Source: Octopus bimaculoides (lineage: Eukaryota). From it: a DNA stretch of 50,835 nt. The position numbers and the translations under genes were made by a program. The stretch is taken from NCBI RefSeq assembly GCF_001194135.2, contig NC_068989.1, forward strand, positions 14,860,580 through 14,911,414, written 5' to 3'. The stretch's first letter is position 1; the number at the start of each line of letters is the position of its first letter. Below are positions 721-43,855 of this stretch, piece after piece. Below the pieces are notes generated by a model. The model was not told the origin of the DNA. It did no database searches and was given only the letters and a program-made list of their open reading frames with translations.

Positions 721-884
721 TACGACGGGCTTCTTTCGGTTTCCGTCTACCAAATCCACTCACAAGGCTTTGGTCGGCCCGAGGCTATAGTAGAAGACAC
801 TTCCCCAAGGTGCCATGCAGTGGGACTGAACCCGGAACCATGTGGTTGGTAAGCAAGCTACTTACCACACAGCCACTCCTGCGC
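451..884 (-). mobile_element. Full-length young tRNA-derived SINE, family A, with 9-bp TSD
   Basis: Minus strand: GCGCAGGAGTGGCTGTGTGG (A box), GGTTCAGTCCC (B box), GGCACCTTGGGGAAGTGTCTT, internal (TA)n, tail GACTGAAACAAGTAAAAGAGT; ATATATACA repeated at 442-450 and 885-893. Confidence 0.93.
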
Positions 885-2980: not shown

Positions 2981-3714
2981 ACTTGATTTTAAATCTATTA
3001 TTTACTCTATCACTCTCTATTGCCAAATCACTAAGTTACACAGATATTGACAAATCAATACCAGTCATTAAGCAGGATGTAGGAGGAGACAAACACAAAG
3101 ACACCCCCACCACACACACACACTATGTGTGAAGGCACATGGCTCAGTGTTTAGAGTGTCAGGCTCACAATCATGAGGTAGTGAGTTCGATTTCCCAGAC
3201 CAGGTTGTGTGTTGTGTTCTTGAGCAAGACACTTTATTTCATGTTCCTCCATTTTACCCAGCTGTAGAGACGAGTTGCGACATTGCTACCAAGATGTATC
3301 AGCCTTTCCCTTGGATAACATCAGTGGAGTGGAGAGGGGAGGCTGGTATGCATGGGCGACTGCTGGTCTTCCATAAACAACCTTGCCCAGACTTGTGCCT
3401 CAGAGGGTAACTTTCTAGGTGCAATCCCATGGTCATTCATGATCGAAGGTGGTCCTTACCTTACCTTACTTTGTTTGTTTGTATGTATGTATGTATGTAT
3501 GTATGTATGTATGCATGCATGTATGTACACACACACACACACACACACACAAATGGACTTCTATACAGTTTCTGTCTACTAAATCCACTCACGAGGCATT
3601 GGTTGGCCCAGTGTTATAATAAAAGACCCTTGCCCCAAGGTGCCACACTGTGGGACTGAACCTAAAACTATGTGGTTGTTAAGCAAGCTTCTTAACTACA
3701 CAGTCATGCCTGTC
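2981..3714 (-). mobile_element. Old family A SINE (2981-3125 and 3552-3714) split by a family C insertion
   Basis: Degenerate A body left of C and A head right of C, joined through (CA)n/(GTAT)n. Confidence 0.7.
3127..3470 (+). mobile_element. Family C tRNA-derived SINE with a CORE-like domain
   Basis: GAAGGCACATGGCTCAGTG (A box), GAGTTCGATTTCC (B box), GTGTTCTTGAGCAAGACACTTTA resembling the MIR/CORE motif CTTGGGCAAGTCACTTAA; (CTTAC)n tail; three further copies in the window. Confidence 0.88.
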
Positions 3715-3803
3715 TTTTTTTTTTAATTAATTTTGTTCGTTGCATTACTTGTAGCTTGCCTAATACACACACACACACACACACACACACACCTCAGATA
3801 CAC

Positions 3804-3844
<41 letters not shown>

Positions 3845-4489
3845 ACAGATACACTCACATGCACTTATATATTTCATATTACTTGGTAAAAAAAAAGTAA
3901 AAATTTCAATATCACCCACAAAAAAAAAAGAAAAAAAATAATGAAACCGTTAAATTTCATTTTGTAAACGGATACAATATTTGAACTTTCTAGATTCAGT
4001 TACTTCCCAGTTGGCAGAGCTGAAACCCAAGCTGGTGAGTGTATATAAAATGGAGGCACCTGTAGCAAGGCCTAGAATCAAGACCTTACAGCTTTAGTAA
4101 CAAGAATCACATCACATTTAGGTCTGGCAACATGTCTTGAATATTAACCTATCAACTTGCTGGAACATCACCCCATATTAGAGACTGTTCTATTTTGTTT
4201 CAGTAGTTCCCTTGCTTTTCAGCAGTTTGGCAAATATGACTTATAGAACAAGTACCAGATTTTTTAAAAAGATAATAAGTACTGGGGCTAATTTCTGTGA
4301 CTAAAGCCTTCAAGGTAATGCCCCAGCAAAGCCACAGTCCAATAACTAAAACAAATAAATAATAACACCATGCTTTTGCTAACCGTTTTAAGTGTTTATG
4401 TAATTTCAAGCAGACATAGACATTCACTGTCCTCCCATCTTTGATCCAGTGGAACAATGAAGCTGTGACAGCGGGAGTGAAAGAGGCCA

Positions 4490-4630
4490 GCATCAGTGCT
4501 CAGCTGGTTCTCGTTTTCAGTTGAGTAGTCTGTAGCAACATCAAATGAAGGGTCTTACTCATGGACATAATGCATTACCCAGTCCAGGAATGAAACCCTA
4601 TGACCTTATGCTTGAGAACCAAATACCATT
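4490..4630 (-). mobile_element. Degenerate CORE-like SINE fragment
   Basis: Reverse complement resembles the C-family core (AGTAAGACCCTTCATTTGATGTTGCTACAGACTACTCAACTG). Confidence 0.5.
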
Positions 4631-5744
4631 AAAAAGAAATGGTTTAAGCCATATGAGTAAAACAGTCAATTCATAGAATTGCAACAAAAAAATTGCACAC
4701 CTATAAATAGGTAAAACTAAAGATTCCTTATTTTTCTCAGCACAGATGAACCCATTGCAGATTCTTAGGAATTTGCAGTTCAAATCCAGCAACTTAAAGA
4801 ATTCCCAGCTTAAACTTTACTGTGTAGGAACCAAGTATACTCAGTTCCATGCATGTGCACTTGAGATACAGAACTGGGTTAGCTTGTTTTCGACAGTGGG
4901 GCATTTGCCAAAATTCTCCATATTTCACATGACATATTACACACATTTGTTTTTACTGCCCAATAGAAAAGCGGTTGCTAGAAGAGATTTGCATATAATT
5001 AGCATGTCAGATCACCAGCAAAAAGTTACTCAGCACAATGAGGGTTAAGATCTCTTCTATCCCTGCTCCAATACAAGTGAAATGAAGTTGTTTTAGCCAA
5101 GAATGAAATCCGAGTTGCTGACAAAGCTTGCCGGGATCTTGTCTTCACAGTACAACAGTAATAACCCCCACCTGGGTACAATAGTTATCATTAAATCAAC
5201 TGGAATTCTGAAAGCTAGACAACAAGAATGCAGCAGTGGCTGTTAAAATAATGCATTAGCTAGATATTCTGCAGTTTCTCAGCTATCTGCAGTTTACTGT
5301 TGCATTACAAATAGCATTCCAAGGAATTGCATTGCTGCATATTGACTCAGACGGTGCAGTTTTGTGCAATAAATTATACATTGCGGCTGGAGAGAACAAT
5401 AAAAACAGTGTATATGTGTTGCTAATGTGCAGTAATGCAAGATAGGTTTCTTTATGACCTTGTTTCATTTCCTAGTAGGAGCTGTTGCACTTTACTTCTA
5501 CTCTTAGTGGAAAGCAAGCACATTACAACCTTTCTGGTTAGGTCCTTCTCATTGAGTGTGACTTAAATGAAGAGTGTTGAAGAAAACTTGAGGGTGACTG
5601 AACCATGGTTTGAGTGAGGGAGTGATTAATAATGGAAAGTCACTAATAAAAATGCATAAAAAAGTTGAAAATGGAGAACAAGAAAAATGTTAACCCAGCC
5701 ATATTAACAGGATTTTCTGAACATTTTTATGGATTCTTCTGAGC

Positions 5745-5747
5745 AGG

Positions 5748-5796
<49 letters not shown>

Positions 5797-6060
5797 CTGT
5801 GTGTCTGTGTTTGTCCCCTCACCATCACTTGGCAACCAATGTTAGTGTGCTTACATCCCCTGTGACTTAGCAGTTCAGCAAAAGAGACCATTAGAATAAG
5901 TCCTGGGGTCAATTTGTTCGACTAAAGATGGTGCTCCAGCATGGCTGCAGTCAAATGACTGAAACAAGTAAAAGAATAAGTCCTGGGGTCGATTTACTCG
6001 ATTAAAAGGCGGTGCTCCAGCATGGCCACAGTCAAATGACTGAAACAAGTGAAAGAGAGT
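5745..6060 (+). mobile_element. Family A SINE 3' half with a tandemly duplicated ~80-bp terminal module
   Basis: AGAATAAGTCCTGGGGTC...GACTGAAACAAGT occurs at 5893-5972 and 5973-6053. Confidence 0.88.
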
Positions 6061-6061
6061 A

Positions 6062-6252
6062 AACTGGACAAAATGCTTAGAAACAGTTCTTCTGACTTTA
6101 CATTCTGAGTTCAAGCACCACCAGGGTCAACTTTGCCTTTCATATTTTCGGTGTTGATAAAATAAATACCAGTTGAGCACTGGGGTCAATGTAATCAACT
6201 TACTCGCCCCTGAAAATTGCTGGCCTTGAGCCAAAATTTGAAACCAATATTA
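6062..6252 (+). mobile_element. Family D SINE, 5'-truncated
   Basis: CTGAGTTCAA B box, then GTCAACTTTGCCTTTCAT...GATAAAATAAATACCAGTTG; resembles the Deu/Nin central domain as I recall it (unverified). Confidence 0.8.
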
Positions 6253-6270
6253 AACATGTGATTATGAAAT

Positions 6271-6404
6271 AGAGTGGTTGGTGTCAGGAAGAGCATCCAG
6301 CTGTAGAAACCATGCCAAAACAGACTAGAGCCTGGTACAGCCCTCCGGCTTGCTGGCCCTTGTCAAATCGTCCACCCATGCCAGCATGGAAAAACAGATG
6401 TTAA

Positions 6405-6440
<36 letters not shown>

Positions 6441-6459
6441 CTGATGATGATAATGATGA
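6271..6459 (+). mobile_element. Family F: RTE-LINE-type 3' UTR with (GAT)n tail
   Basis: GGAAGAGCATCCAGCTGTAGAAAC...CCATGCCAGCATGGAAA...TTAAATGATGATGAT; the same module adjoins RTE coding remnants at 38570-39305. Confidence 0.8.
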
Positions 6460-7330
6460 ATAGCTCACGTGCATTACTTCAGAGATTACCGATAATAAGT
6501 TACATACCTGTGGTGCCCATGGTTATATAGATCCAGCAGAGTTGGGTAGGGGGCATAGTTGTGACGAATTCAAAAAGAACAAAAAAAAAAAAAGAAATCG
6601 TTCATAAAATTTCCAGCTTACCTGCAATAAAGTATAAAAAAAAAGAATTATTATTGTTACCATCATTATTGCAATTATTATTATTATTATTATTGTTATT
6701 GATGATGATGNNNNNNNNNNNNNNNNNNNNNNNNNNNNNNNNNNNNNNNNNNNNNNNNNNNNNNNNNNNNNNNNNNNNNNNNNNNNNNNNNNNNNNNNNN
6801 NNNNNNNNNNNNNNNNNNNNNNNNNNNNNNNNNNNNNNNNNNNNNNNNNNNNNNNNNNNNNNNNNNNNNNNNNNNNNNNNNNNNNNNNNNNNNNNNNNNN
6901 NNNNNNNNNNNNNNNNNNNNNNNNNNNNNNNNNNNNNNNNNNNNNNNNNNNNNNNNNNNNNNNNNNNNNNNNNNNNNNNNNNNNNNNNNNNNNNNNNNNN
7001 NNNNNNNNNNNNNNNNNNNNNNNNNNNNNNNNNNNNNNNNNNNNNNNNNNNNNNNNNNNNNNNNNNNNNNNNNNNNNNNNNNNNNNNNNNNNNNNNNNNN
7101 NNNNNNNNNNNNNNNNNNNNNNNNNNNNNNNNNNNNNNNNNNNNNNNNNNNNNNNNNNNNNNNNNNNNNNNNNNNNNNNNNNNNNNNNNNNNNNNNNNNN
7201 NNNNNNNNNNNNNNNNNNNNNNNNNNNNNNNNNNNNNNNNNNNNNNNNNNNNNNNNNNNNNNNNNNNNNNNNNNNNNNNNNNNNNNNNNNNNNNNNNNNN
7301 NNNNNNNNNNNNNNNNNNNNNNNNNNNNNN

Positions 7331-7532
7331 GCACAACAGAAACAGGGAGTAAGAGTGAGAGAAAGTTGTGGTGAAAGAGTACAGCAGGGTTCGCCACCAT
7401 CCACTGCCAGAGCCTCGTGGAGCTTTAGGTGTTTTCGCTCAATAAACACTCACAACGCCCAGTCTGGGAATCGAAACCGCGATCCTATGACCGCGAGTCC
7501 GCTGCCCTAACCACTGGGCCATTGCGCCTCCA
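7331..7532 (-). mobile_element. Family B SINE 5' part (tail in gap)
   Basis: Minus strand TGGAGGCGCAATGGCCCAGTGGTTAGGGCAGCGGACTCGCGGTCATAGGATCGCGGTTTCGATTCCC (A and B boxes). Confidence 0.92.
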
Positions 7533-7734
7533 CTCTCGTTCTATGGCATTCAGAAAGAGAAATAATTGCTTCTATTATATAGTTGACTAATCATATTGAT
7601 TCATCATATTGTGACCCATGTCATCAATAATGAAAAATAAGTGAGGTTAATAAACCACCACTCAATAACAACAACAACCACAACAACCACAACCACAGCC
7701 TAGCCTCCACTCCAGAGAGTGAGCAACGCCAACA

Positions 7735-7978
7735 AGGAAACAGTCATTTGATCTGTTTGAAAGAGCCGCGTAAGTCTCTTTCAAAGCCACACCCAACCAT
7801 CTTAAAAATTCAAAATAGGAAGCAGCATACACTGAATAATACAGTTTAAAAAGTATGACTATATCGGAGTAAAAGACGGGATGGTGATGACTGGAATGCT
7901 CTTTGATCATATCTATGCTTTACTAGGATGTTGGGGTGAAGGCCTGACCTGGTGTTAAAGAGCAAAACAGCAACAACA
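7735..7978 (+). mobile_element. Family I SINE-like repeat, degenerate, (CAA)n tail
   Basis: GGGATGGTGATGACTGGAATGCTCTTTGATCAT...GACCTGG...CAACAAC; related to 10935-11550 and 24760-24950. Confidence 0.65.
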
Positions 7979-8141
7979 CTTCTAAGCATCACCATTGAAA
8001 AGATATCAAGAAAGTGCATCAGCACTGATTTTCTTTTCTTTTTCTTTTTTTCATGGCTCAGCTGCGCCCACCTCTATGTGTGATGCATAAACATGACAGC
8101 ATATTCTGGTGACATCTTACACACAAACGCATATACATACA

Positions 8142-9029
<888 letters not shown>

Positions 9030-9043
9030 ACGACAGATAGATA

Positions 9044-9197
9044 TAGGTGCAGGTATAAATGTGTAGTTAAGAAGATCACTTTGTAACCACATGGTTTCAA
9101 GTTCAGTTCCACAGTAAGGCATCTTGAGCAAGTGTCTTTAAGTATAGCACTAGGCTGACCAATGCTTTCTGAGTGAATCTGGAAAATGAAGACTAAG

Positions 9198-9233
<36 letters not shown>

Positions 9234-9478
9234 GTGCATATGTGTGTGTGTGTGTGCATGCATGCATGTATGTGTATTGTGTTTGTCCACCACCACCATC
9301 ACTTGACAACTAGTGCTGGTTTGTTTACGTCTGTGTAACTTAGCAGTTTGGCAAAAGAGAATGACATAGAATAAGTACTAGATTTAAAAACTAGCGGTTG
9401 ATGTGTTTGACTAAACTCTTCAAGGCTGTGCCCCAGCAAGGCCCAGAGCCCAATAACTTAAACAAAATAAATAAGATA
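9044..9478 (+). mobile_element. Old full-length family A SINE
   Basis: Diverged head, (CT)n/(TG)n interior and diverged tail, colinear with young A copies. Confidence 0.75.
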
Positions 9479-9531
9479 ACATCTTCACACACACACACAC
9501 ACACACACAGGAGTCAAAACATGTGGGACCA

Positions 9532-9712
9532 GGTGCAGTAGTGGCTGTGTGGTAAGTAGCTTGCTTACCAACCACATGGTTCTGGGTTCAATCCCACTGC
9601 GTGGCACCTTTGGCAAGTGTCTTCTACTATAGCCTCGGGCTGACCAAAGCCTTGTGAGTGGATTTGCTAGACGGAAACTGAAAGAAGCCCGTCGTATATA
9701 TGTATATATATA
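9532..9712 (+). mobile_element. Young family A SINE head running into a gap
   Basis: Near-identical to 1607-1801. Confidence 0.92.
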
Positions 9713-10638
9713 NNNNNNNNNNNNNNNNNNNNNNNNNNNNNNNNNNNNNNNNNNNNNNNNNNNNNNNNNNNNNNNNNNNNNNNNNNNNNNNNNNNNNNNN
9801 NNNNNNNNNNNNNNNNNNNNNNNNNNNNNNNNNNNNNNNNNNNNNNNNNNNNNNNNNNNNNNNNNNNNNNNNNNNNNNNNNNNNNNNNNNNNNNNNNNNN
9901 NNNNNNNNNNNNNNNNNNNNNNNNNNNNNNNNNNNNNNNNNNNNNNNNNNNNNNNNNNNNNNNNNNNNNNNNNNNNNNNNNNNNNNNNNNNNNNNNNNNN
10001 NNNNNNNNNNNNNNNNNNNNNNNNNNNNNNNNNNNNNNNNNNNNNNNNNNNNNNNNNNNNNNNNNNNNNNNNNNNNNNNNNNNNNNNNNNNNNNNNNNNN
10101 NNNNNNNNNNNNNNNNNNNNNNNNNNNNNNNNNNNNNNNNNNNNNNNNNNNNNNNNNNNNNNNNNNNNNNNNNNNNNNNNNNNNNNNNNNNNNNNNNNNN
10201 NNNNNNNNNNNNNNNNNNNNNNNNNNNNNNNNNNNNNNNNNNNNNNNNNNNNNNNNNNNNNNNNNNNNNNNNNNNNNNNNNNNNNNNNNNNNNNNNNNNN
10301 NNNNNNNNNNNNNNNNNNNNNNNNNNNNNNNNNNNNNNNNNNNNNNNNNNNNNNNNNNNNNNNNNNNNNNNNNNNNNNCATATCAAATGACTTACTTGTA
10401 CACCTCAAAACCAAGAAAACATTCGCATCAGTTCAAACTCCCTACTTTCCCTTACACATTCTACTGAAAAATTAAACACAATTAATGAGAACCCTATAAA
10501 TTTCACATTTACTATAAATATAAACACCTACGCATCAGCACTTGAAAAGTACTGAATGCTTATTATACGACCTGAAAACTATAACACATAACACTCACTC
10601 ACATTAAAAATATTTAAGAGGAAAAGAAAAATCATGGG

Positions 10639-10682
<44 letters not shown>

Positions 10683-10934
10683 GACACTTGACATTCTTAA
10701 ATTTCTGGCAATCTTCTGTAAACTACTTGTAGGAAGGTGGGTGTTAAATATAAAGGAATCATTGTAAACACTTTAAACAGAATAATATTAATACTAGGAT
10801 AGACAAACACTAATGTTTCACCATCACGAATAAATAAATAAATAAATATACAGAGAATATAAAACAATATGTATTGTGAGCAAACGCTAACAAATGCATA
10901 CTTAAACACCAATAAGCAATACTATCATAACCAA

Positions 10935-11150
10935 TAAGAGTCATGTAGGGAGCCTCTACACGGTTACTCAACCTGCTAGAAATAGTCACTAATTCTCGCT
11001 GTGTGGTAAGTAGCTTGCTTACCAACCACATGGTTCTGGGTTCAGTCCCACTGCATGGCACCTTGGGGAAGTGTCTTCTACTATAGCCTCGGGTCGAACA
11101 AAGCCTTGTGAGTGTGGATTTGGTAGACGGAAACTGAAAGAAGCCCGTCG

Positions 11151-11187
<37 letters not shown>

Positions 11188-11550
11188 ATGTGTTTGTGTG
11201 TCTGTGTTTGTCCCCTTCAACATCGCTTGACAACCGATGTTGGTGTGTTTACGTCCCCGTAACTTAGCGGTTCAGCAAAAGAGACTGATAGAATAAGTAC
11301 TAGGCTTCCAAAGAATAAGTCCTGGGGTTGATTTGCTCGACTAAAGGCGGTGCTTCAGCATGGCCACAGTCAAATGACTGAAACAAGTAAAAGAGTAAAG
11401 AGTAACTTCTTAAATAAGGAATGGATAAATCAATTGGTGTAGTCCTTACCATATATGCTAAGGGAAGTTGTGATGGTCACAGCTGGAATACCTTTGATCA
11501 CAGGCTTGCTTAGTCAGAGTTGAGAGCTCAGGTTAAAATATCAACAACAT
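10935..11550 (+). mobile_element. Family I element (10935-10997 and 11406-11550) interrupted by a family A SINE
   Basis: CTCAACCTGCTAGAAATAG on the left and GATGGTCACAGCTGGAATACCTTTGATCACAGG on the right are colinear with 24760-24950. Confidence 0.7.
10998..11405 (+). mobile_element. Young near-full-length family A SINE
   Basis: Complete body and (AAAGAGT)n tail; lacks the first ~10 nt. Confidence 0.92.
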
Positions 11551-12010
11551 CAAATTTTGATCATTAGCCTACTCAATGGAATTGAGCTGGGGTTCACTAG
11601 TAACACCAACGTTTTATCATAGGTTTGATCAATCAGTGTTGAGCTGGGATTTAAACTTCAGCAACAACTTTTAATCATAGGAATGCTGAAGCAGAGTTGT
11701 GTTAGGATTAAACAACAACAATCTTGGATCATAGGTTTTTCTCAGTCAGAGTTGAGCTGAGATTAAACAACAACAATGGTATTGAGCTGGGGTTCAACAG
11801 TAACACCAACGTTTTATCACAGGTTTGATCAATCAGAGTTGAGCTGGGATTTAAACTTCAGCAACAACTTTTAATCATAGGAATGCTGAAGCAGAGTTGT
11901 GTTAGGATTAAACAACAACAATATTGGATCATAGGTTTTTCTCAGTCAGAGTTCAGCCGAGATCAAACAACAACAATCTTTGATCAGAGGTTTGCTCAAT
12001 CTAGGATTAA
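11491..12010 (+). repeat. Minisatellite of ~55-bp monomers derived from the family I tail, with a 200-bp higher-order duplication
   Basis: About 10 monomers TT(T/G)ATCATAGG...GAGTTGAGCTG...AAACAACAAC; 11578-11777 and 11778-11977 differ at about 9 positions. Confidence 0.9.
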
Positions 12011-12305
12011 ATAAATACACAAAACATCATCTGAACTGTTTAGATTGAGCATCAGCTACGTTCATCTCACCAGTGTAGGAGAGACTACAAAACTCATAGC
12101 CTACTCCTCCCCTACGACTACTTTATAAAACAACAACACTAACATGCACTCATCCGCACATACAGAATACTAACAAACACTGGCTCAAAAGTAATGCATA
12201 GAATATGTCTCCATGAGATAAATAATCAGAAGTGGGGAAAAAAATCAGGACAGCAAAAGAAGCAAACTATGTCGGTATGTTGAGGAGAAAAGAGACTTAG
12301 AGAGG

Positions 12306-12362
<57 letters not shown>

Positions 12363-12479
12363 TTAGTTAATCCCTACTAAAGTAATTTAAGTGGCTGGTT
12401 GAGATATTTTACACCTCTCACTCATAATGTCTTCATATTCATATTTTTAAAATATTTATTATATTTTACCTAATGTTAC

Positions 12480-12692
12480 TTAACAACAGTTGGAGGAAGG
12501 GATGAAGGAGAAGAAATGTATGCCAAAAATGTGACACAAGCAAATACAAGAACTCCGCTTTCCAGCAGCACAGGAGTGTTGCTAATAATATCCACTTTGG
12601 ATTGAGCCTCCACTTCTGATGGAGTTGAGAGACACCGTGTTTGATATATGATATGTCTTGGGCATTTAAACAGTCTCACCACAACCAATTTC
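12480..12692 (-). CDS. Candidate 213-nt internal exon of unknown product
   Basis: Pyrimidine tract plus AG at 12694-12693; open frame KLVVVRLF...SLPPTVVK; donor AA|GTAACA coincides with the in-frame stop; no recognisable homology. Confidence 0.22.
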
Positions 12693-12699
12693 CTCAAGA

Positions 12700-12728
12700 G
12701 AGAAGGAGAGAGAGAGAGATATAGATAA

Positions 12729-12759
<31 letters not shown>

Positions 12760-12926
12760 GACAGACAGACAGAGACAGACAGACAGAGACAGACAGACAG
12801 AGACAGACAGACAGAGACAGACAGACAGAGACAGACAGACAGAGACAGACAGACAGAGACAGACAGACAGAGACAGACAGACAGAGACAGACAGACAGAG
12901 ACAGACAGACAGAGACAGACAGACAG
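12700..12926. repeat. (GA)n then (GACA)n/GAGA minisatellite with ~14-bp period
   Basis: CAGACAGACAGAGA repeated. Confidence 0.92.
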
Positions 12927-13102
12927 AATGAAGGTTCTTACTACTAAACTGACTGGAAATGTATTTATCAACCCAGAAAGGTAAAGCCCATTTCTACAGG
13001 ATTTGAACTTTTGAACTCAGTGTGCAGAGATCCAGAACAAGTACCTGCTTGGCATTCTCTCCAACATTCTAATGATTCTATTACATTGATATCTTTAATA
13101 AT

Positions 13103-13687
13103 GTGAGGGCATGTGGCTTAATGGTTAGAGTATTTGGTTGTGTGTTGTTTCCTTGAGCAAGCCATTTTTTTTTGTATTGCCAGTCCACTCAGCATGTGAA
13201 GGCGCATGGCTCAGTGGTTAGAGCATCGAGCTTACGATCGTGAGGTTGTGAGTTTGAATCCTGGACCAGGCTGCGTGTTGTGTTCGTGAGCAAGACACTT
13301 TATTTCACGTTGCTCCAGTCCACTCAGCTGTAGAAATGAGTTGCGACGTCATTGGTGCCAAGCTGTATCGGCCTTTGCCTTTCCCCTGGATAACACTGGT
13401 GGCATGGAGAGGGGAGGCCGGTATGCATCGGCAACTGCTGGACTCCCATAAAACAACCTTGCCCGGACTTGAGAGGGTAACTTTCTAGGTGCAATCCCAT
13501 GGTCAGTCATGACTGAAGGGGGTCTCAGCCACTCAACTGTAGCCAAAATGAGTTGTACCTGTATTTCGAAAGGGCCAGCCTTGTTACATTCTGTGTCATG
13601 CTGAATCTCCCTGAGAACTATGTTAAGGGTACACATGTCTGTCAAGAGCTCAGCCTCTTGCATATTTAATGAGCAAGCTGTTCCGTT
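13103..13687 (+). mobile_element. Older chimeric SINE (CORE-like 5' part plus family B 3' module) at 13103-13193 and 13526-13687, split by family C
   Basis: Left CCTTGAGCAAG...CAGTCCACTCAGC; right CAGCCACTCAACTGTAG...AAAGGGCCAGCCTTG...CTGAATCTCCCTGAGAACTATGTTAAGGGTACAC (B tail). Confidence 0.75.
13196..13525 (+). mobile_element. Family C SINE, young and full length
   Basis: GTGAAGGCGCATGGCTCAGTGGTTAGAGC...GAAGGGGGTC; imperfect 12-13-bp flanking duplication. Confidence 0.9.
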
Positions 13688-14253
13688 ACTCAGTTCATCT
13701 CAGCAGAGTACCTGGAAAATTTTAGTGATAATTGTAAATTTGGAAAAAGAGTAACTGAAGAAAATTTAATTATCTTAACTTAATTCTCTTTTTAGTAATT
13801 AATAGGTGATGATAACTTAATGTTCATGTCCCAGCTAATTTATTTAAGGACACCAAATTCAGAAGAGGAAATTCAAATTAACATATGGCCCTTTCACAAT
13901 TGTCTGTAGTCTAACCCCTTGAAACATTATCATTTGAAACAGAATCTTGGGTGTTGGGTATGACTTAATCAGAAGTAGAAAGGTGGTGTCCAATGACTCT
14001 TTTTTCAGGGTTTTAGAGATTCATGGGAGGAATGGAGGAAGTTATGGTTGGACACAGGGTCCCAGCCTGAATATACGCATTAGAGTGGGGCTTTGACAAA
14101 GGTATAAAGATACTCAAAAGTTAGTGCTGGTCTTTAACCCATATGACAGATTAAGTTTCAAGTTTAAGAACCGTCCCTCCAAGAGGCTTCTACACAGTTT
14201 CTATCTCCTAAATTTTGTTCCATTCACATGATATTGGTGGGCCCATGGCTATA

Positions 14254-14470
14254 TGAGGGACAGGGTGCTGAAAAGTTCTTGCCTTTGGGTAGAAAAAAAT
14301 ACAGGAGGATCGATTATGATTTTATGAAACATATTCCCCTCTCAGATTTACACACCTATTGCAGTGGTCCTTCAGTTTTTCTAAGCCCTATAAAAGAACT
14401 CAGAAGTTTGGCCCTTCAACCAGGCCTTTCGCGATACCCTTAAAGCTAGGAACTTTTCGGCACCCCATCA
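14254..14470. mobile_element. mariner-derived MITE inserted at a TA within an old minus-strand A head
   Basis: TIR-like ends TGAGGG..GTGCTGAAAAGTTCTTG and GCTAGGAACTTTTCGGCACCCC; minus strand reads KDHCNRCVNLRGEYV*, like a mariner transposase C-terminus; second copy at 34501-34969. Confidence 0.8.
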
Positions 14471-14995
14471 TGGTAGAAGACATTTATTGAAGGTGCCAAA
14501 GGAACGCACTAGTGTTAAACCCTCATGACATATTAGGTCTACCACCCAAGGACAAGGAACACACCTTCCAAAGGATTCCACAAAGTTTCTGTCTACTAAA
14601 GCCCACAAAACTATGGTGGCTCCTCAGTTCTATTAGAAGAAACATGCCCAAGGTGCTATGCCATTATCTGTAGACAGACTGCTTTTAAAATTTGAAAAGG
14701 AGACAAAACCTATCTGTAAATCTAATCTCTCTATTCTCTTTAGAAACTAGTAAAAAAAAAGAAGTCTAACAAAAAAATGAAATGGAAGAAAATTTTAAAT
14801 TGTAGTTTCCATTTTTTAAAAAAAATGCAATAAAACATGAAAATCAAGTTACACAGGAAAAAAGTTTGAAATACAATTTCTATTAAAAATTTTAAAAAAC
14901 ACTAATAGAACATTTAAATAGAAAACTGAAATATCTGAGAAATGCTTTTCTCTGATTTTCATCCAAATTTCTTTTATTATTGCTAGAAAAACTAA

Positions 14996-15225
14996 GGCGG
15001 CAAACTGGCAGAATCGTTAGCACAACAGGCAAAATACTAAGTGGCATTTCGTCCATTGCTACGTTCTGAGTTTAAAATCCACCGAGGTCAACTTTGCCTT
15101 TCATCCTTTCGGGGTCGCTAAAATAAGTACCAGTTGAATGAACACTGGGGTCGATGTAACTGACTTGTACCCACCTCCCCCAAGCTGCCCTTGTGGCAAA
15201 AAAAAAAAAATTTGAAATAATTATT
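14996..15225 (+). mobile_element. Family D SINE, full length
   Basis: AAGGCGGCAAACTGGCAGAATCGTTAGC head, B box, central GTCAACTTTGCCTTTCATCCTTTCGGGGTC. Confidence 0.88.
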
Positions 15226-15234
15226 GCTAGAAAC

Positions 15235-15449
15235 CCTATTAGGCCAAACTGCTAAGTTAAGAGGCCATAAAGAAACCAACAGAGTGGTGAAGAGGGACAA
15301 ACATAACATAAAGACACACACAGCGGGCTTCCTTACAGTTTCCATCAACCAAATTCACTCACACAGCACAAGGTGTCATACAGTGGGACTGAACCTGAAA
15401 GCATGTGGTTGCAAAATGAGCTTCTTACCCACACAGCCATGTCTGTACC
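15235..15449 (-). mobile_element. Degenerate, internally deleted family A SINE
   Basis: GGGCTTCCTTACAGTTTCC...CAGTGGGACTGAACC...CACACAGCCATG. Confidence 0.7.
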
Positions 15450-16257
15450 TAGATAGATTATGTCCAAAAACAATTTTTTTTAATAAAAAAAAAAAAAAAA
15501 GACAGTGTGGAATGCTTTTGATCACAGGTTTTAGTAGATTGCAGTTGACCTAGGGCTAAATAGCATTATCATTCAATTTCCATTTTTTTTTCTTTTTTTT
15601 CCTTTCAGCAATAAAATCAGAATGACATTTTAAATTTACCGTCCTCTTAATACTTATATACCAGTCAAGTCTGTTCTTTATTGAGTTGGCTGCTTCCAGC
15701 TTTGACATCCTAAATTGGTAAAAACGGTTTAGCTGTTTGCACCTACCCTACTTAAAAGCAAATGAAAAAGAGGAAAAAAAAAAAAAAAGTCTGTTGCTTT
15801 ATTAGCAATCTGAATCACTTCTTGAATAACTTATGTGAATAACCTCTTACAGATGATTGATGGAATTCTAAGTTTGTTTTTCATAATGAGGTTGACAATT
15901 GCTGTTTTATGGTAATATATCATATTTCCTCTTTTCCGATGATAGAACAATGACAGTAGATCAAATTCCACCCCCAACTCCATCCGTAAGCTTAGCCTCA
16001 TACTACAGTTTTAACTATTGTAACCAATTCAAAAACTTTCCTGTCCAATATAGTTTGAGGGGATTTTTTTCTGGGGTTTTATCTTTTTTTTTTTTTTTTG
16101 ACACTATGAAAGAGATGAAGTTCAAGATTTCACAGTTTATGAAATTAAGTGTCAATAATTAAAAATACACAATCAAATATTGAACTATCACAACAACTTA
16201 TTTTTAGTCAGTATAATTCCTTATGCTGTATATACATATATATGTTAAAGTCTGTCA

Positions 16258-16308
16258 TACCGGCCATGACGACGGGAAATAGCTCTGAAACTCGAGTCGC
16301 CTTTATAT
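16258..16308 (+). ncRNA. Decayed minimal hammerhead-ribozyme-like motif (Penelope pLTR type)
   Basis: GGC-CATGACGA-CGGGAAATAGCTCT-GAAAC-TCGA-GTC-GCC: near-CUGANGA core, GAAA, palindromic ACTCGAGT, GUC triplet, stem I GGC/GCC. Confidence 0.45.
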
Positions 16309-16989
16309 AGTTATATTTATATATTTGATCCTTTATATTGAACACTCAATATTTCATCTACATTCAATACTTTCTTTCATGGTGCCATCCATTTTTATTT
16401 TATTTTATTTTATTTTATATTATATATTGTATATTATATTATATATTGTATATTCCATATTCTATACCCCACATTGGTTCTGCAGGAATATAAATAAAAC
16501 ATAAAAAACAGACAGTGTTGGAACTCTTTTAAACAAAATAATATATTCCTCTATACACAATCATACNNNNNNNNNNATATACCAGTTAGTATTCTGAATG
16601 AAGGCAAAATGTCTGGTAGACTCATCATAGGAATCTAGCTTACTGAGCTAAGTTCCTGAGACAAGCCTATGAAGTTAAGTTGCATGGAGATAAATCACAT
16701 TATTTTAAATAATAATTATTATTATTATAATTATTATTATTATTATTATTATTATTATTGTTGTTGTTGTTGTTGTTGTTGTTGTTATATATTTCAAAGA
16801 ATGGAGTTAACAAATGATAATCATTTCATCATCTTTCTATAATCAATCTATCGTAAGACAGTAATCATGCTGGCATCTATTGATCAATTTTCATATATTT
16901 TGTAGGGTTTTCTTTTATAACACATGCTGAACATGATTCTTCAGAATTTCATAAAAAGTGTAATATCTAGTAAATAAAAAGGAATGGAT

Positions 16990-17770
16990 AGCTCAAAACA
17001 TCACTACACACATTTCAATATTGTTGTTTCATTTCTTTCTAGCCTTTGCAAATCCCCTGCATTCAGAACCTACATTTCACTATAATGCAACACCACACTT
17101 CACATATAAGCATCATACAATCTACTCTCCACACTGAGAGAGAAAAACTTTTTTCTGTTACCAGCATAGGTAAAAGCACTCAGAGATTTTTCTATTCTAT
17201 TCTTATTCTGGATACTATATTTTCCATAGCCAATTAGATTGCCTTAGTAACAGAAGCTATTAACTACCTTTAGAGAACCATCAGCACATTTTCAAGAAAC
17301 TATTTAGAATGTACTCTTAATATTTACTACTTCTGAGCATCTGTCACATACTAAACCTGCTGTTTCTATTAGCCTCCTTGTGATTCCACTACAACATTGT
17401 GTATTCATAGGTTCAACCTACACCTTTTCTGCATATCAAGTACAACCATTCCACTGATAGTATCAGTATTTTTTTTTTCCTTGTTTCCTTACTAAGGCTT
17501 TATTTGTCTTGTGATTGGCCTGAGTCAGTAATTTCCTTTTTTTTTACATTTCCTTCACTCTCATAGCAGTTGACAATGATGCTGCAAACCAATCAATGGG
17601 TTTGAAACCTTCTTGCACCACCACATGACTTTTCAAGTGACTAGCCCAAGCCCTACTCCATCAGACATTTCCATCTTCTCTACATTTACTCCTAATGGAT
17701 CAGACACTTTCCTTGCCTTCATATCCCTAACCTTTAGCATACTTAATCAAATTATGTCGTTGTATGAGTT
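16990..17770 (-). pseudogene. Heavily decayed RTE-clade LINE ORF2 (reverse transcriptase) fragments
   Basis: Minus-strand translation with stops and shifts: MKARKVSDPLGVNVEKMEMS.., SIIVNCYESEG, CSGITRRL..LVCDRCS, LKVVNSFCY*G, RLYDAYM*SVVLHYSEM*VLNAGDLQRLERNE; matches the order of RTE RT motifs. Confidence 0.75.
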
Positions 17771-18099
17771 TTCTCCCCTGTAACTGCAGCTTCATTGTAT
17801 CGCATTGAGAGGGGAGAAAACACATACAGCAACATGATTCACCTTCAGTGTGCTAAAAGTTAATTGATATATCATCATCATCCTCATCATGCTTGTATGA
17901 GTCAAATGAAACTTGTTGAGGCAGATCTTCTATGGCTGAAAATTCTTTCTATCTCCAAACCATGGATTCTGAAGCAAACTTCTGAACCACATACACAAAT
18001 ACACTATACACACACACACACACCACCACCACCACCATTACATATACATACCCACACATTACATTACACATACATTATACACACATACAAACATATTTC

Positions 18100-36449: not shown

Positions 36450-37482
36450 AGTTGCACCAGTCACTGGGTAGCAGCCATGCTGGTGCACCACCATGAAGGG
36501 TTTAGTCAAAACAAATCAACTTCTCTGATTATTATTTTTCTTTTTCTTAAAATCTGGTATCTCTTTTTGATGAACTGCTTGGTTATGGGGAAATAAAACA
36601 AACCAAAACTCATCATCAAGCAGTGGTAAGGAACAAAGAGAAACATAAAGACACACACATAGATAGACAGACAGACAGATAGATAGATAGATACAGCAGG
36701 CTTCCACACAGTTTTCATCTACCAAATTCACTTACAGTGCATTTACTCTTTTACTCTTTTACTTGTTTCAGTCATTTGACTGTGGCCATGCAGGAGCACC
36801 GCCTTTAGTAGAGCAAATCGACCCCAGGACTTATTCTTTGTAAGCCCAGTACTTATTCTATCGGTCACTTTTGCCGAACCGCTAAGTTACGGGGACGTAA
36901 ATACACCAGCATCGGTTGTCAAGCGATGTTGGGGAGACAAGCAGAGACACACAAACACACACACATCATCATCATCATCGTTTAACGTCCGCTTTCCATG
37001 CTAGCATGGGTTGGACGATTTGACTGAGGACTGGTGAAACCGGATGGCAACACCAGGCTCCAATCTAATTTGGCAGAGTTTCTACAGCTGNNNNNNNNNN
37101 NNNNNNNNNNNNNNNNNNNNNNNNNNNNNNNNNNNNNNNNNNNNNNNNNNNNNNNNNNNNNNNNNNNNNNNNNNNNNNNNNNNNNNNNNNNNNNNNNNNN
37201 NNNNNNNNNNNNNNNNNNNNNNNNNNNNNNNNNNNNNNNNNNNNNNNNNNNNNNNNNNNNNNNNNNNNNNNNNNNNNNNNNNNNNNNNNNNNNNNNNNNN
37301 NNNNNNNNNNNNNNNNNNNNNNNNNNNNNNNNNNNNNNNNNNNNNNNNNNNNNNNNNNNNNNNNNNNNNNNNNNNNNNNNNNNNNNNNNNNNNNNNNNNN
37401 NNNNNNNNNNNNNNNNNNNNNNNNNNNNNNNNNNNNNNNNNNNNNNNNNNNNNNNNNNNNNNNNNNNNNNNNNNNNNNNNNN

Positions 37483-39707: not shown

Positions 39708-40393
39708 NNNNNNNNNNNNNNNNNNNNNNNNNNNNNNNNNNNNNNNNNNNNNNNNNNNNNNNNNNNNNNNNNNNNNNNNNNNNNNNNNNNNNNNNNNNNN
39801 NNNNNNNNNNNNNNNNNNNNNNNNNNNNNNNNNNNNNNNNNNNNNNNNNNNNNNNNNNNNNNNNNNNNNNNNNNNNNNNNNNNNNNNNNNNNNNNNNNNN
39901 NNNNNNNNNNNNNNNNNNNNNNNNNNNNNNNNNNNNNNNNNNNNNNNNNNNNNNNNNNNNNNNNNNNNNNNNNNNNNNNNNNNNNNNNNNNNNNNNNNNN
40001 NNNNNNNNNNNNNNNNNNNNNNNNNNNNNNNNNNNNNNNNNNNNNNNNNNNNNNNNNNNNNNNNNNNNNNNNNNNNNNNNNNNNNNNNNNNNNNNNNNNN
40101 NNNNNNNNNNNNNNNNNNNNNNNNNNNNNNNNNNNNNNNNNNNNNNNNNNNNNNNNNNNNNNNNNNNNNNNNNNNNNNNNNNNNNNNNNNNNNNNNNNNN
40201 NNNNNNNNNNNNNNNNNNNNNNNNNNNNNNNNNNNNNNNNNNNNNNNNNNNNNNNNNNNNNNNNATTAAGTTAAATTCTTTACTATTTCAAGTTACGAGA
40301 CAAAAATGTCTGTTCAATTATTATAGAATTATTATTATTCAATTATTATAATATTGCCATTAACTTTCTTTACATCATCCTCCTTTCTTGCAG

Positions 40394-40471
40394 ATCAATA
40401 AAATATTTTTATTCTTGTTTGATTTTTTCTATATTGGGATTTCTGAAAAATCAATCGATCAATCCTCTCAG
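40394..40471 (+). CDS. Candidate 78-nt exon of unknown product
   Basis: Long pyrimidine tract plus TTGCAG acceptor; CAG|GTATTC donor; two of three frames open; no homology recognised. Confidence 0.15.
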
Positions 40472-40931
40472 GTATTCATAAAAGGAGAATCAGCATGTAG
40501 GATGGAGTCAAGCAAGATTAATGTATTTATTGTCTACCCAAGGTTAGGCAAAATATTACCCATGTTACTCAGCCAAGCATAATATGGATTTCTTTCTAAT
40601 ATAGACATGGCTGAGTGGTTGTGAAGTTTTCTTCCCAGAAGGATGAATAATAAAATTGACCTTGACAGGAGGATCAATACTGAGATCATCAATTCAATTC
40701 ACCTTTTATCACATTTGTACAAATTCAACAAGAATTTCTAGACACAAAAGGCATTTCACTATCAGGACTCAAGACCTAATTGTCTGGCCAAAACTTAGCC
40801 ATTAAAGCTGTCCTTTGAGGCAAATGTAGAGAGCGTTCTTTTCTCCATGGAGCAGAAATCTGGACTACGAAGACAGAGCTTCAAGATTGAAATTGATGAC
40901 AGAAAGCCTCTTATAAGGATTAAAAACATCT

Positions 40932-41408
40932 TGTAGTGGCGCATGTGGCTGCCATCTTAGGAAGTGCCATTGCGCATGTGCAAGGGACTTGCCGTCAGCA
41001 GAAGTACTTGAGCACACATGCGCAATGCAACAGGTGGAGAGAGAGCAATAGCGTTCGATCTCTTTTCTCTCAAGTAGCTGTTGTGACAACACATATCTCT
41101 CAACTCGACCCCGACATGTGGTCGAAGCTTCCTTGGTATCCTAGCGGCATGCCTGTTCACCCAGGAATGAAACGGCTCTACACCAACCTAGAATAAACTA
41201 TTGATCTGTTGTTACCGTTATCCCTCGTGTTGTTGTATTTCTGGATTTAATGATTAATATAAGAACTGGGGAGAGACGGTCAAGCCGTCATATCTCATCC
41301 AATTCTTATAACTGGTGACCCCGACGTGATCCTGTTCACATAGCTTCTCTTAAATGGTGACTAAGTGCCAGCTATAGGACCAACCGTTCTTTCAGTTTTT
41401 TCACTACA
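40932..41408 (+). mobile_element. LTR-retrotransposon (Gypsy-like) remnant: TG..CA-bounded 477-bp element with a 4-bp TSD and an internal tRNA-Trp PBS
   Basis: ATCT|TGTAGTG...CACTACA|ATCT; AATAAA at ~41192; TGGTGACCCCGACGTGAT at 41313-41330 is the exact complement of the conserved metazoan tRNA-Trp(CCA) 3' 18 nt. Confidence 0.82.
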
Positions 41409-42267
41409 ATCTCATGATGTAATCACAAGACCAAAGAGATGATACATGGATACATTCCACCCATCTCCAGGGGTGTAGCGAGGTTCTTAAAAAAAGTACC
41501 GTGACACATACCAAACAATTTTTAACTCATTTCTCTTATATTACGTGAAATATTTCATTAGTTAAAACGTATGTAACTGTATTCTACATGTATTAATTTC
41601 ATGTTGGAAACTAACTGAAAGAAGTTTGTCATGTGTGTATGCACGTGTGTATGTATATATCATCATCATCATCATCATCATTTAATGTCTGCTGTCACCC
41701 CATCGCCACCCCACAAACTCACCAAGCCATATCAATGTTACCTCTAACTTTTACCCTTACCTCACTCCACTCTCACTCACATTCAGTCCCCCCCCCCCCN
41801 NNNNNNNNNNNNNNNNNNNNNNNNNNNNNNNNNNNNNNNNNNNNNNNNNNNNNNNNNNNNNNNNNNNNNNNNNNNNNNNNNNNNNNNNNNNNNNNNNNNN
41901 NNNNNNNNNNNNNNNNNNNNNNNNNNNNNNNNNNNNNNNNNNNNNNNNNNNNNNNNNNNNNNNNNNNNNNNNNNNNNNNNNNNNNNNNNNNNNNNNNNNN
42001 NNNNNNNNNNNNNNNNNNNNNNNNNNNNNNNNNNNNNNNNNNNNNNNNNNNNNNNNNNNNNNNNNNNNNNNNNNNNNNNNNNNNNNNNNNNNNNNNNNNN
42101 NNNNNNNNNNNNNNNNNNNNNNNNNNNNNNNNNNNNNNNNNNNNNNNNNNNNNNNNNNNNNNNNNNNNNNNNNNNNNNNNNNNNNNNNNNNNNNNNNNNN
42201 NNNNNNNNNNNNNNNNNNNNNNNNNNNNNNNNNNNNNNNNNNNNNNNNNNNNNNNNNNNNNNNNNNN

Positions 42268-43326: not shown

Positions 43327-43441
43327 AATATTAGTACTGCATGACACAGTAAAGATTCAAAACCCCAGCTAAGAAAGTTGATCAATGAAACACAAGAAGT
43401 TCAATTTGTCAGATATGCTTTACTGAGATTTGATATACGTA

Positions 43442-43855
43442 GGTGCAGGAGTGGCTGTGTGGTAAGTAGCTTGCTTACCAACCACATGGTTCCGGGTTCA
43501 TTCCCTCTGCGTGGCACCTTGGGCAAGTGTCTTCTACTATAGTCTCGGGCCGACCAAAGCCTTGTGAGTGGATTTGGTAGACGAAAACTGAAAGAAGCCC
43601 GTCGTATATATGTATATATATATATATGTGTGTATATGTTTGTGTGTCTGTGTTTGTCCTCCCAACATCGCTTGACAACTGATGTTGGTGTGTTTACATC
43701 CCTGTAACTTAGCGGTTCGGCAAAAGAGACCGATAGAATAAGTACTAGGCTTACAAAGAATAAGTCCTGGGGTCGATTTGCTCAACTAAAGGTGGTGCTC
43801 CAGCATGGCCACAGTCAAATGACTGAAACAAGTAAAAGAGAGTAAAAGAGAGAGT
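43442..43855 (+). mobile_element. Full-length young family A SINE
   Basis: Complete head, (TA)n, body and (AGTAAAAGAG)n tail. Confidence 0.93.

What the first reader, a model, noticed from the sequence alone, without database searches (positions are those of the whole stretch)
40928..41412. Solo-LTR-like element that carries a perfect tRNA-Trp primer-binding site inside its own boundaries
Seen: a 477-bp, GC-richer segment bounded by TGTAGTG...CACTACA and flanked by a 4-bp direct repeat (ATCT at 40928-40931 and 41409-41412), the signature of an integrase-made LTR insertion. At 41313-41330, 78 bp inside the right end, lies TGGTGACCCCGACGTGAT. Established: this is exactly complementary to the 3' 18 nt of metazoan tRNA-Trp(CCA), the primer of some Gypsy lineages such as the CsRn1 clade, and a PBS normally lies just outside the 5' LTR and is absent from solo LTRs. 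The bases before the PBS (..TTCTTATA-AC) look like an older LTR end but differ from the CACTACA end. Inference: either the family's U5 was extended to swallow an old PBS after priming shifted downstream, or this is a drastically deleted or TRIM-like element. Either way the locus keeps a perfect target for 18-nt 3' tRNA fragments.
Basis: partly seen in the sequence, partly recalled or inferred. Interest (0 to 1): 0.75.

Follow-up and report, generated by a model that had tools for sequence, protein, structure and literature searches.

The report
One-off overlong LTR insertion, octopus retrotransposon
A 477-bp retrotransposon piece (a normal long terminal repeat, its tRNA-Trp primer site and 78 bases of the element's interior) was inserted as one unit with a 4-base target duplication; it is a rare mis-made copy of an ordinary, abundant octopus Gypsy-type family, not a new kind of element.

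Summary
Every coordinate in the finding is correct. A related species has the same locus without the 481 bp and with a single ATCT, so 40932-41408 is a true insertion with a 4-bp target-site duplication.

The family-level interpretation does not hold:
- In other copies the repeat starts at 40932 but normally ends at 41310 (+/-2). The canonical LTR is about 380 bp, and the tRNA-Trp primer-binding site (PBS) sits in its normal place, 2 nt after it.
- The 78 bp after the PBS are the family's leader. About 20-35 copies carry it, and nearly all read through CACTACA into one shared internal sequence (AT-TATTTCCTGTTTCGTCTG...).
- No group of copies ends at CACTACA.
- There is no second LTR, no polypurine tract (PPT) and no coding remnant.

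My best explanation is that integrase joined the true U3 end and a cryptic end in the leader. That cryptic end is a heptamer that exactly mirrors the U3 terminus. The product is a one-off "LTR+PBS+leader" insertion.

[quoted passage not shown] That assignment is untested because no pol sequence is present. No locus-specific RNA was seen. The finding is a variant of a known kind and of modest interest.

The parts
40928..40931 (.). Left copy of the 4-bp target-site duplication, ATCT
   Evidence: The empty-site contig in organism C has a single ATCT ('skips 481', 4 letters fit both sides).
40932..41310 (+). Canonical LTR (U3-R-U5, about 379-381 bp) of a high-copy family. It begins TGTAGTG and ends ..CAATTCTTATA. 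Whether 1-2 more bases belong to the LTR is unresolved.
   Evidence: Contig word depth is 3,000-18,000 against 11.2 for single-copy flank. Random flanks begin before 40932 (10 contigs, agreement 0.44) and behind 41310 (7-9 contigs, 0.46-0.50; 18 raw reads, 0.55). Three other species show the same boundaries.
40932..40938 (+). U3 terminal heptamer TGTAGTG (left att end)
   Evidence: The family-wide left boundary falls exactly here.
41192..41197 (+). AATAAA, a candidate polyadenylation signal inside the LTR
   Evidence: Sequence only. The R boundaries were not determined.
41258..41310 (+). Hairpin in U5 that abuts the PBS (arms TATAAGAACTGG / CCAATTCTTATA, extended to about 22 bp)
   Evidence: Inverted repeat I3. 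It is present in both the MFE and the centroid fold. The fold of the whole 173 nt is not significant (z = -1.4).
41311..41312 (+). AC spacer between the LTR and the PBS
   Evidence: 20 of 23 raw reads that span LTR to PBS keep these bases.
41313..41330 (+). Primer-binding site, 18/18 complementary to the 3' end of tRNA-Trp(CCA) including CCA
   Evidence: The same exact 18-mer occurs in an RNA contig of a related copy (X10 record 9).
41331..41408 (+). First 78 nt of the family's leader (5' UTR)
   Evidence: Repeated about 20-35 times by raw-read depth (18-24 reads at an assumed ~0.7x coverage). Contig depth is 350-1,100 against 11.2. Other copies continue beyond it into shared internal sequence.
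41402..41408 (+). CACTACA, the exact inverted complement of the U3 terminus. It is internal in other copies and forms the right end here (cryptic att end).
   Evidence: Depth collapses from 641 to 27 at 41410/41411. Continuations in other copies are listed.
41409..41412 (.). Right copy of the target-site duplication, ATCT

Best explanation
The segment is a single, aberrant integration product of an ordinary LTR retrotransposon. The host is probably Octopus bimaculoides, and the family is probably Ty3/Gypsy of the CsRn1 clade.

The inserted DNA was one canonical LTR (40932-41310), the AC spacer, the tRNA-Trp PBS and the first 78 nt of the leader. Its left end is the normal U3 terminus.

Its right end is not the normal U5 terminus. 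It is an internal heptamer, CACTACA, that exactly mirrors the U3 terminus and ends in CA. Integrase used that heptamer as a second att end and joined both ends to a 4-bp staggered cut at ATCT.

The route I favour starts from an incompletely made or nicked cDNA. After the second strand transfer, the plus strand carried a 3'-OH at or 2 nt beyond this CA. Host repair then removed the rest of the cDNA as a 5' flap.

What is shown: the insertion is precise, it carries a target-site duplication, the canonical LTR ends 98 bp upstream, CACTACA is internal in the other copies, and the form is rare.

What is inferred: that integrase made the right-hand joint, and which cDNA intermediate supplied the end.

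The copy has no coding capacity and no second LTR, and no transcription was detected. It is a dead relic, not a working element.
For: 1. A sister species has the empty site with one ATCT.
2. The left boundary at 40932 is shared by all copies, with random flanks before it.
3. The usual right boundary is 41310, with random flanks behind it. The PBS follows after AC, and 20 of 23 spanning reads have the window's junction.
4. Depth steps down along the unit: about 9,000 at the LTR end, about 1,100 over the PBS, 350-1,000 over the leader, and 27-57 after 41410. Single-copy depth is 11.2.
5. Across CACTACA, 13 and 11 raw reads from two runs give the same continuation, TATTTCCTGTTT(C/T)GTCTG. Contigs give related versions. 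No group ends at 41408 with random flanks.
6. The 7-bp inverted repeat plus the 4-bp direct repeat is expected about 4e-4 times per kb by chance. By contrast, one CACTACA somewhere in an interior of about 5 kb has a chance of about 0.3 by my arithmetic. A cryptic site therefore needs no special explanation, and its use by integrase explains both features.
7. The unit has no second LTR or terminal direct repeat, and there are no Pfam domains in 40265-41799 in any frame.
8. A tRNA-Trp PBS and a 4-bp duplication are the stated hallmarks of the CsRn1 lineage. That clade was found in 9 of 12 cephalopods.
9. An ORF within the LTR matches an O. bimaculoides protein at 78% identity.
Against: - No second example of this form was found, so the mechanism rests on a single locus.
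- The first two bases of the duplication (AT) are also the next two bases of the leader in most copies (CACTACA-AT-TATTTCC). Some variants even read CACTAC(A)ATCT. A joint made by microhomology cannot be excluded.
- The terminal dinucleotide of the canonical LTR and the family's usual duplication length could not be read from consensus-only output.
- I know of no documented natural case of integrase using a recessed or internal 3'-OH with a long 5' flap. Experimental aberrant integrations usually show an irregular second junction.
- No genome assembly was available, so copy counts come from word depth and from reads at about 0.7x coverage.
Confidence: 0.6

Rival explanations
1. In one replication cycle, minus-strand synthesis was primed just downstream of CACTACA instead of at the PBS. 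Both LTRs of the progeny DNA then became U3-R-U5-PBS-leader78 (477 bp). The element integrated normally, and recombination between its two LTRs later left this solo LTR.
For: - It yields exactly a 477-bp unit with TG...CA ends and a 4-bp duplication.
- Solo LTRs are common in this family. Only about 30% of LTR ends are followed by the PBS, and word depth is about 8-fold higher over the LTR than over the PBS.
- Shifts of LTR edges through altered priming are known from retroviral genetics. This is from my memory and was not checked here.
Against: - The sequence that follows CACTACA in other copies (ATTATTTCCTGTTTCGTCTG, or ATCTTTTGCAAAAAC) has no TGG and no resemblance to a tRNA 3' end. No primer can be named.
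- It needs three rare or separate events.
- No sibling with long LTRs, and no other copy ending at CACTACA, was seen.
Confidence: 0.2
2. A full-length element inserted here with an ATCT duplication. An illegitimate, microhomology-mediated deletion later removed everything from leader position +79 to the last base of the 3' LTR. On this reading the CACTACA inverted repeat is a coincidence.
For: - The leader reads ..CTACA-AT.. and the 3' LTR end plus duplication would read ..TTATA-AT(CT). That gives 3-6 bp of microhomology at the required joint.
- Some variants carry ATCT right after CACTAC(A).
- Internal deletions flanked by short repeats are common in LTR elements. This is established knowledge, not tested here.
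Against: - One breakpoint must fall exactly at the outer edge of the 3' LTR.
- The other must fall exactly after a heptamer that mirrors the U3 end, a 4^-7 coincidence. The combined signature is expected about 4e-4 times per kb.
- No trace of the 3' LTR remains.
Confidence: 0.07
3. Integration was one-ended. Integrase inserted only the U3 end, and host repair joined a broken or truncated cDNA end in the leader, as in experimental 'aberrant integrations'.
For: Such proviruses are documented. They have one normal junction, and the other end is often truncated and joined by host enzymes. The AT overlap at the right joint fits end-joining.
Against: In those experiments the host DNA at the aberrant end is usually duplicated or deleted irregularly. 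Here the duplication is exactly 4 bp, and the viral end is a CA within a perfect 7-bp copy of the att sequence.
Confidence: 0.06
4. The piece is an ordinary truncated 5' LTR plus PBS, and the right-hand match is coincidental.
For: Other copies do end at ..TTATA before the PBS.
Against: - The empty site in a sister species shows that exactly 477 bp plus one ATCT are extra.
- 41331-41408 is the family's leader, not flank.
- The chance expectation for the signature is 0.04 per window.
Confidence: 0.02

Closest known systems
Solo LTR / 5' LTR-PBS region of a Ty3/Gypsy element of the CsRn1 clade
   Same: It has TG...CA ends, a 4-bp target-site duplication and an 18-nt PBS complementary to tRNA-Trp 2 nt after the canonical LTR. 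The clade is common in cephalopods. The LTR family is high-copy and shared by four related species.
   Different: A solo LTR contains no PBS or leader. Here the integrated unit runs 98 bp past the canonical LTR end. Clade membership is untested because no gag or pol sequence is present.
Experimental aberrant retroviral integrations (ASLV and HIV-1 vectors with a defective end or impaired integrase; Hughes laboratory, PMC5041404)
   Same: One viral end is joined normally, and the other end lies inside the viral DNA, which truncates the provirus.
   Different: There the second joint is made by host enzymes and comes with irregular host duplications or deletions. Here the joint has a canonical 4-bp duplication and an att-like CA end. 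This case is also a natural germ-line event in an invertebrate retrotransposon.
TRIM / SMART miniature LTR retrotransposons (e.g. the 292-bp grass element, PMC3281118)
   Same: The unit is small, non-coding, contains a PBS and is flanked by a target-site duplication.
   Different: TRIMs have two terminal direct repeats and a PPT, and they amplify as families. This unit has one LTR and no terminal direct repeat, and it is a single copy of its form.
PBS-targeting 3' tRNA fragments (tRF-3) that restrain LTR retrotransposons in mouse; this is from my own knowledge, and review hits are listed
   Same: The locus carries the perfect 18-nt complement of a tRNA 3' end.
   Different: Nothing here shows tRF-3(Trp) in octopus or transcription of this copy. 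Every PBS-bearing copy of the family offers the same target.

Membership tests
LTR retrotransposon insertion made by integrase | Short target-site duplication, with an empty site that has one copy of it | tested here: met
   ATCT lies on both sides. The orthologous contig in organism C lacks 481 bp and keeps one ATCT.
LTR retrotransposon insertion made by integrase | TG...CA termini forming a short inverted repeat | tested here: met
   TGTAGTG...CACTACA is a perfect 7/7 inverted repeat.
Solo LTR | Both boundaries coincide with the family's LTR boundaries | tested here: not met
   The left boundary is shared at 40932. The family's right boundary is 41310, not 41408.
Solo LTR | Contains no PBS or internal sequence | tested here: not met
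   The PBS lies at 41313-41330, followed by 78 nt of leader that continues into the interior in other copies.
Long-LTR subfamily (U5 extended over the old PBS) | Several independent copies end at CACTACA with unrelated flanks, or elements carry the unit at both ends | tested here: not met
   In the raw reads, 24 of 27 reads in the listed groups that cross the end share one continuation. No group with random flanks at 41408 was found (contigs). The limits are ~0.7x read coverage and consensus-only output, so a handful of copies could be missed.
TRIM / miniature LTR retrotransposon | Two terminal direct repeats with a PBS and a PPT between them | tested here: not met
   The unit has no terminal direct repeat. 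The longest internal direct repeats are 10-21 nt chance-level matches. There is no purine tract before a second LTR.
Ty3/Gypsy, CsRn1 clade | PBS complementary to tRNA-Trp | tested here: met
   18/18 match to the tRNA-Trp 3' end with CCA. The feature is stated as diagnostic. The comparison used the human tRNA; the octopus tRNA-Trp was not available.
Ty3/Gypsy, CsRn1 clade | 4-bp target-site duplication typical of the group | tested here: met
   This rests on one locus only.
Ty3/Gypsy, CsRn1 clade | CHCC gag motif, GPY motif in integrase, RT phylogeny | not testable with these tools
   The window has no internal region. No eukaryotic assembly could be searched, and pattern scans of three collections found nothing.
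Functional tRF-3 target | The PBS is present in a transcript, and tRF-3(Trp) exists in the host | tested here: inconclusive
   No reads at 97% or better fall on the flanks or junctions in three RNA-seq runs, with about 6% of each run sampled. No small-RNA data were available.

The most novel reading that the evidence does not exclude
The locus is a natural snapshot of an LTR growing. In one replication cycle the right LTR edge moved 98 bp inward, so the PBS and part of the leader became part of a new, longer and integration-competent LTR. On this reading such jumps explain how LTRs lengthen and why PBS-like relics can sit inside them. One possible relic is GACCCCGACATG at 41107-41118, an 11/12 match to the PBS core.
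Probability: 0.2. Interest if true: 0.5.

Novelty: new variant of a known kind. Interest (0 to 1): 0.33.

Why it matters
The locus shows, in a natural germ line, that the edge of an integrated LTR unit is set by whatever CA-ending, att-like sequence integrase can hold, and not only by the priming sites of reverse transcription.

This matters in two ways. It is a caution for annotation, because LTR finders would call this piece a 477-bp solo LTR with an internal PBS. It is also a small piece of evidence on how LTR boundaries can shift.

It does not reveal a new class of element. It also gives no sign that the embedded PBS has been kept for a function.

Tried and rejected
- **Second copy in the window.** blastn found none. 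The internal continuation motif is also absent.
- **Other copies as sequence.** The LTR ORF found one O. bimaculoides protein. Neither that protein nor the window's own ORF is on record in the contig index. Exact-pattern scans of metagenome, viral and prokaryote collections found nothing. No PacBio or Nanopore runs were served. Other copies could therefore be studied only through read laying consensus output.
- **Paralog of the right flank as an empty site.** A contig starts matching at 41409, and its upstream 30 nt match the left flank at only 17/30. It did not lay on the left flank at 80% likeness. I dropped this line in favour of the orthologous empty site.
- **Loss of the terminal CA.** I first thought the window's LTR/PBS junction had lost a terminal CA. 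Raw reads show the ..ATAAC-TGG junction is the family norm, so I withdrew the idea.
- **tRNA or known RNA families.** None were found in the window.
- **Coding remnants next to the unit.** None were found.
- **A second PBS after CACTACA.** The continuations contain no conserved TGG.
- **Self-priming, Tf1 style.** Checked by eye only. No collinear complementarity between the LTR and the bases after CACTACA was seen.
- **Transcription of this copy.** No junction or flank reads were found in three RNA-seq runs. Exact-match contigs in runs labelled 'RNA?' do not cross a junction.

Full report
**The observation**

Every coordinate in the finding is correct.
- TGTAGTG lies at 40932-40938 and CACTACA at 41402-41408.
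- ATCT lies at 40928-40931 and again at 41409-41412.
- TGGTGACCCCGACGTGAT lies at 41313-41330.
- The unit is 477 bp with 46% GC, against 36% in the flanks.

The 18-mer equals the antisense of the 3' end, CCA included, of a human tRNA-Trp printed in a methods section. The identity stops after 18 nt, which is the hallmark of a PBS rather than of a tRNA gene fragment. The same 18-mer is used as a PBS primer for avian retroviruses.

By shuffling, the 18-mer (up to 3 mismatches) is expected 0.01 times per window, and CACTACAATCT 0.04 times.

The window itself is a gappy eukaryotic draft with 17 runs of N. It has no tRNA genes and no Rfam hits. An ORF inside the LTR matches an 'uncharacterized protein' of Octopus bimaculoides at 78% identity. 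The host is therefore that species or a close relative; this is inference.

**Is it a real insertion?**

Yes. I laid Logan contigs of a related species (organism C, run X18) on 40600-41498. One contig at single-copy depth (757 nt, depth 35.9) matches the left flank 40635-40927 at about 93%. It then continues directly at 41409 for 90 nt. The tool reports 'skips 481', with 4 letters fitting either side.

This is the orthologous empty site with a single ATCT. So 477 bp plus one ATCT were added in the lineage of the window's species.

**What the family looks like**

The unit belongs to a very abundant repeat.
- Contig word depth is 3,000-18,000 over 40933-41310, against 11.2 in the single-copy flank.
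- Raw reads give about 100 reads of depth over the U5 end. I assume ~0.7x coverage from a remembered genome size of about 2.7 Gb.
- The repeat occurs in four species labels.

Other copies begin exactly at 40932, and unrelated sequence lies before that point (10-12 contigs, agreement 0.43-0.52).

Their commonest right end is 41310, not 41408. Unrelated sequence follows there in 7-15 contigs per run (agreement 0.42-0.50) and in 18 raw reads. The canonical LTR is therefore about 380 bp, TGTAGTG...CAATTCTTATA. The bases after 41310 lean to C(A/T), but I could not settle the terminal dinucleotide from consensus output.

About 30% of LTR ends run on into the PBS. Of 23 reads that span the junction, 20 keep the window's ..TTATA-AC-TGG arrangement. 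The PBS thus sits in its ordinary place, 2 nt after the LTR. A hairpin of about 22 bp in U5 (41258-41310) abuts it.

**What the last 78 bp are**

They are the family's leader.
- Depth over 41331-41410 is 350-1,100 in contigs and 18-24 in raw reads. That corresponds to roughly 20-35 copies in this species, and only about 6 copy-equivalents in organism C.
- Other PBS-bearing copies have different leaders.
- Depth collapses from 641 to 27 between 41410 and 41411.

The copies do not end at that point. In two independent raw-read runs, 13 and 11 reads cross it and share one continuation, TATTTCCTGTTT(C/T)GTCTG... Three further reads read CACTACATCTTTTTTTTTATTTCGTCTGT.

Contigs give the same and related versions. 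These include a transcribed relative: U5-like sequence, AAC, a perfect PBS, 74 extra nt, then 41324-41412, then TTTGCAAAAACACATAAGACC.

No group of reads or contigs stops at 41408 with unrelated flanks. In the family, then, CACTACA is an internal leader motif, and the 477-bp form is private to this locus or very rare.

**What it is not**
- It is not a TRIM. There is no terminal direct repeat, second LTR or PPT.
- It is not an element with an internal deletion that kept the tip of its 3' LTR. The last 78 bp do not resemble the last 78 bp of the LTR.
- It has no coding remnant beside it. There are no Pfam hits in six frames of 40265-41799 and no long ORFs downstream.

**Mechanism**

The facts to explain are these:
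- a normal U3 end;
- a right end 98 bp beyond the normal LTR end;
- that right end is a CA inside a heptamer which is the perfect inverted complement of the U3 terminus;
- an exact 4-bp duplication.

A CACTACA somewhere in an interior of about 5 kb is unremarkable, with a chance of about 0.3 by my arithmetic. That the insertion ends exactly there is explained if integrase chose it.

I therefore propose that integrase paired the true U3 end with this cryptic att-like site and carried out a normal concerted strand transfer.

The route I favour starts from an unfinished or nicked cDNA. After the second strand transfer, its plus strand ended at or 2 nt past this CA, giving a recessed 3'-OH. The long 5' tail was then removed as the usual 5' flap is. 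This step is inference.

The alternatives are as follows.
- **One cycle of downstream priming (0.2).** This makes two 477-bp LTRs, followed by solo-LTR formation. It gives the same product. But the conserved bases after CACTACA have no TGG and name no primer, and no long-LTR sibling was seen.
- **A full-length insertion later deleted by microhomology (0.07).** The leader reads ..TACA-AT and the LTR end plus duplication would read ..TATA-AT. Both breakpoints would have to fall on exactly these positions.
- **One-ended integration finished by host repair (0.06).** This is documented for retroviral vectors, but there the second junction is irregular.

**Comparison with what is known**

A tRNA-Trp PBS and a 4-bp duplication are given as hallmarks of the CsRn1 lineage of Gypsy. 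That clade was found in 9 of 12 cephalopods surveyed. Assignment to it is plausible but untested, because no gag or pol sequence is available.

The structure behaves like a solo LTR in being a single LTR with a duplication. It fails two defining tests: its right boundary is not the family's, and it contains a PBS and leader. The nearest documented behaviour is experimental aberrant integration.

**The tRF remark**

The 18-mer is intact. However, this copy differs from the family majority at 13 or more of about 379 LTR positions. About 0.6 changes are therefore expected in 18 nt, and an intact PBS carries no signal of selection.

Three RNA-seq runs, with about 6% of each read and a 97% likeness threshold, gave no read on either flank or junction. 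They gave only R/U5 reads carrying the majority variants of other copies.

**Verdict**

The object is a rare, mis-ended copy of an ordinary family. It is a variant of a known kind and of modest interest. Its main value is as a natural example of integrase accepting a cryptic end, and as a trap for LTR annotation.

Noticed in passing
window 41650-41699: The (ATC)n microsatellite and its surroundings have an enormous word depth: 1.1 million in X1, against 11 for single-copy sequence. Other copies continue with a shared sequence, TTTCCATGCTGGCATGGGTTGGA.., that the window lacks. It looks like part of a hyper-abundant repeat associated with the microsatellite.
   Followed up: no
window 456-873, 10998-11405, 43413-43840, 36743-36965, 1163-1398 and at least 10 more places: A dispersed repeat of about 420-450 bp occurs at least 15 times in the 50-kb window, in both orientations, at 70-95% identity. 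Many copies abut assembly gaps. It is probably a SINE-like family.
   Followed up: partly
window 41499-41605: A separate repeat lies about 90 bp downstream of the insertion. Its word depth is about 5,200 against 11. It is unrelated to the LTR family.
   Followed up: no
window 41424-41467 and 40839-40889: Two short low-copy repeats (about 12 and about 4-5 copies) lie in the right and left flanks, each with sharp boundaries of its own. One or two paralogs of the right flank start matching exactly at 41409.
   Followed up: partly
window 40941-41027: The U3 part of the LTR holds three copies of the motif GCGCATGTG/CACATGCGC. They include a perfect 13-nt inverted pair, CATTGCGCATGTG / CACATGCGCAATG. 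These are possible transcription-factor sites.
   Followed up: no
window 41107-41118: GACCCCGACATG inside the LTR matches the PBS core at 11 of 12 positions. It could be chance (my estimate is about 0.3 such matches expected in this region) or a relic of an earlier internalised PBS.
   Followed up: no
window 41321-41339 (other copies): Some copies carry one or more extra tandem units right after or within the PBS. Examples are GCACCCGACGTGATTCTGTTCATACAG between 41339 and 41321, and 74 extra nt in a transcribed relative. The PBS-proximal leader of this family is prone to tandem duplication.
   Followed up: no
window 41059-41100: Depth across the LTR dips about 10-fold here, and many copies break or differ (loose ends at 41096-41101, plus joints that skip 60-92 nt). 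This marks a hypervariable or indel-rich segment of U3 that separates subfamilies.
   Followed up: no
window 40559-40770: A 213-nt contig in a run labelled 'RNA?' matches the unique upstream flank exactly. Three 2026 RNA-seq runs show no reads there. Whether the locus lies in a transcribed gene or intron is unclear.
   Followed up: partly
run X22, reads ending at window 41306-41308: Sixteen reads switch into the palindromic sequence GGTTCGTCCATCGATCGATGGACGAACC. This looks like a library linker or ligation junction (Hi-C-type library), not genomic sequence.
   Followed up: no
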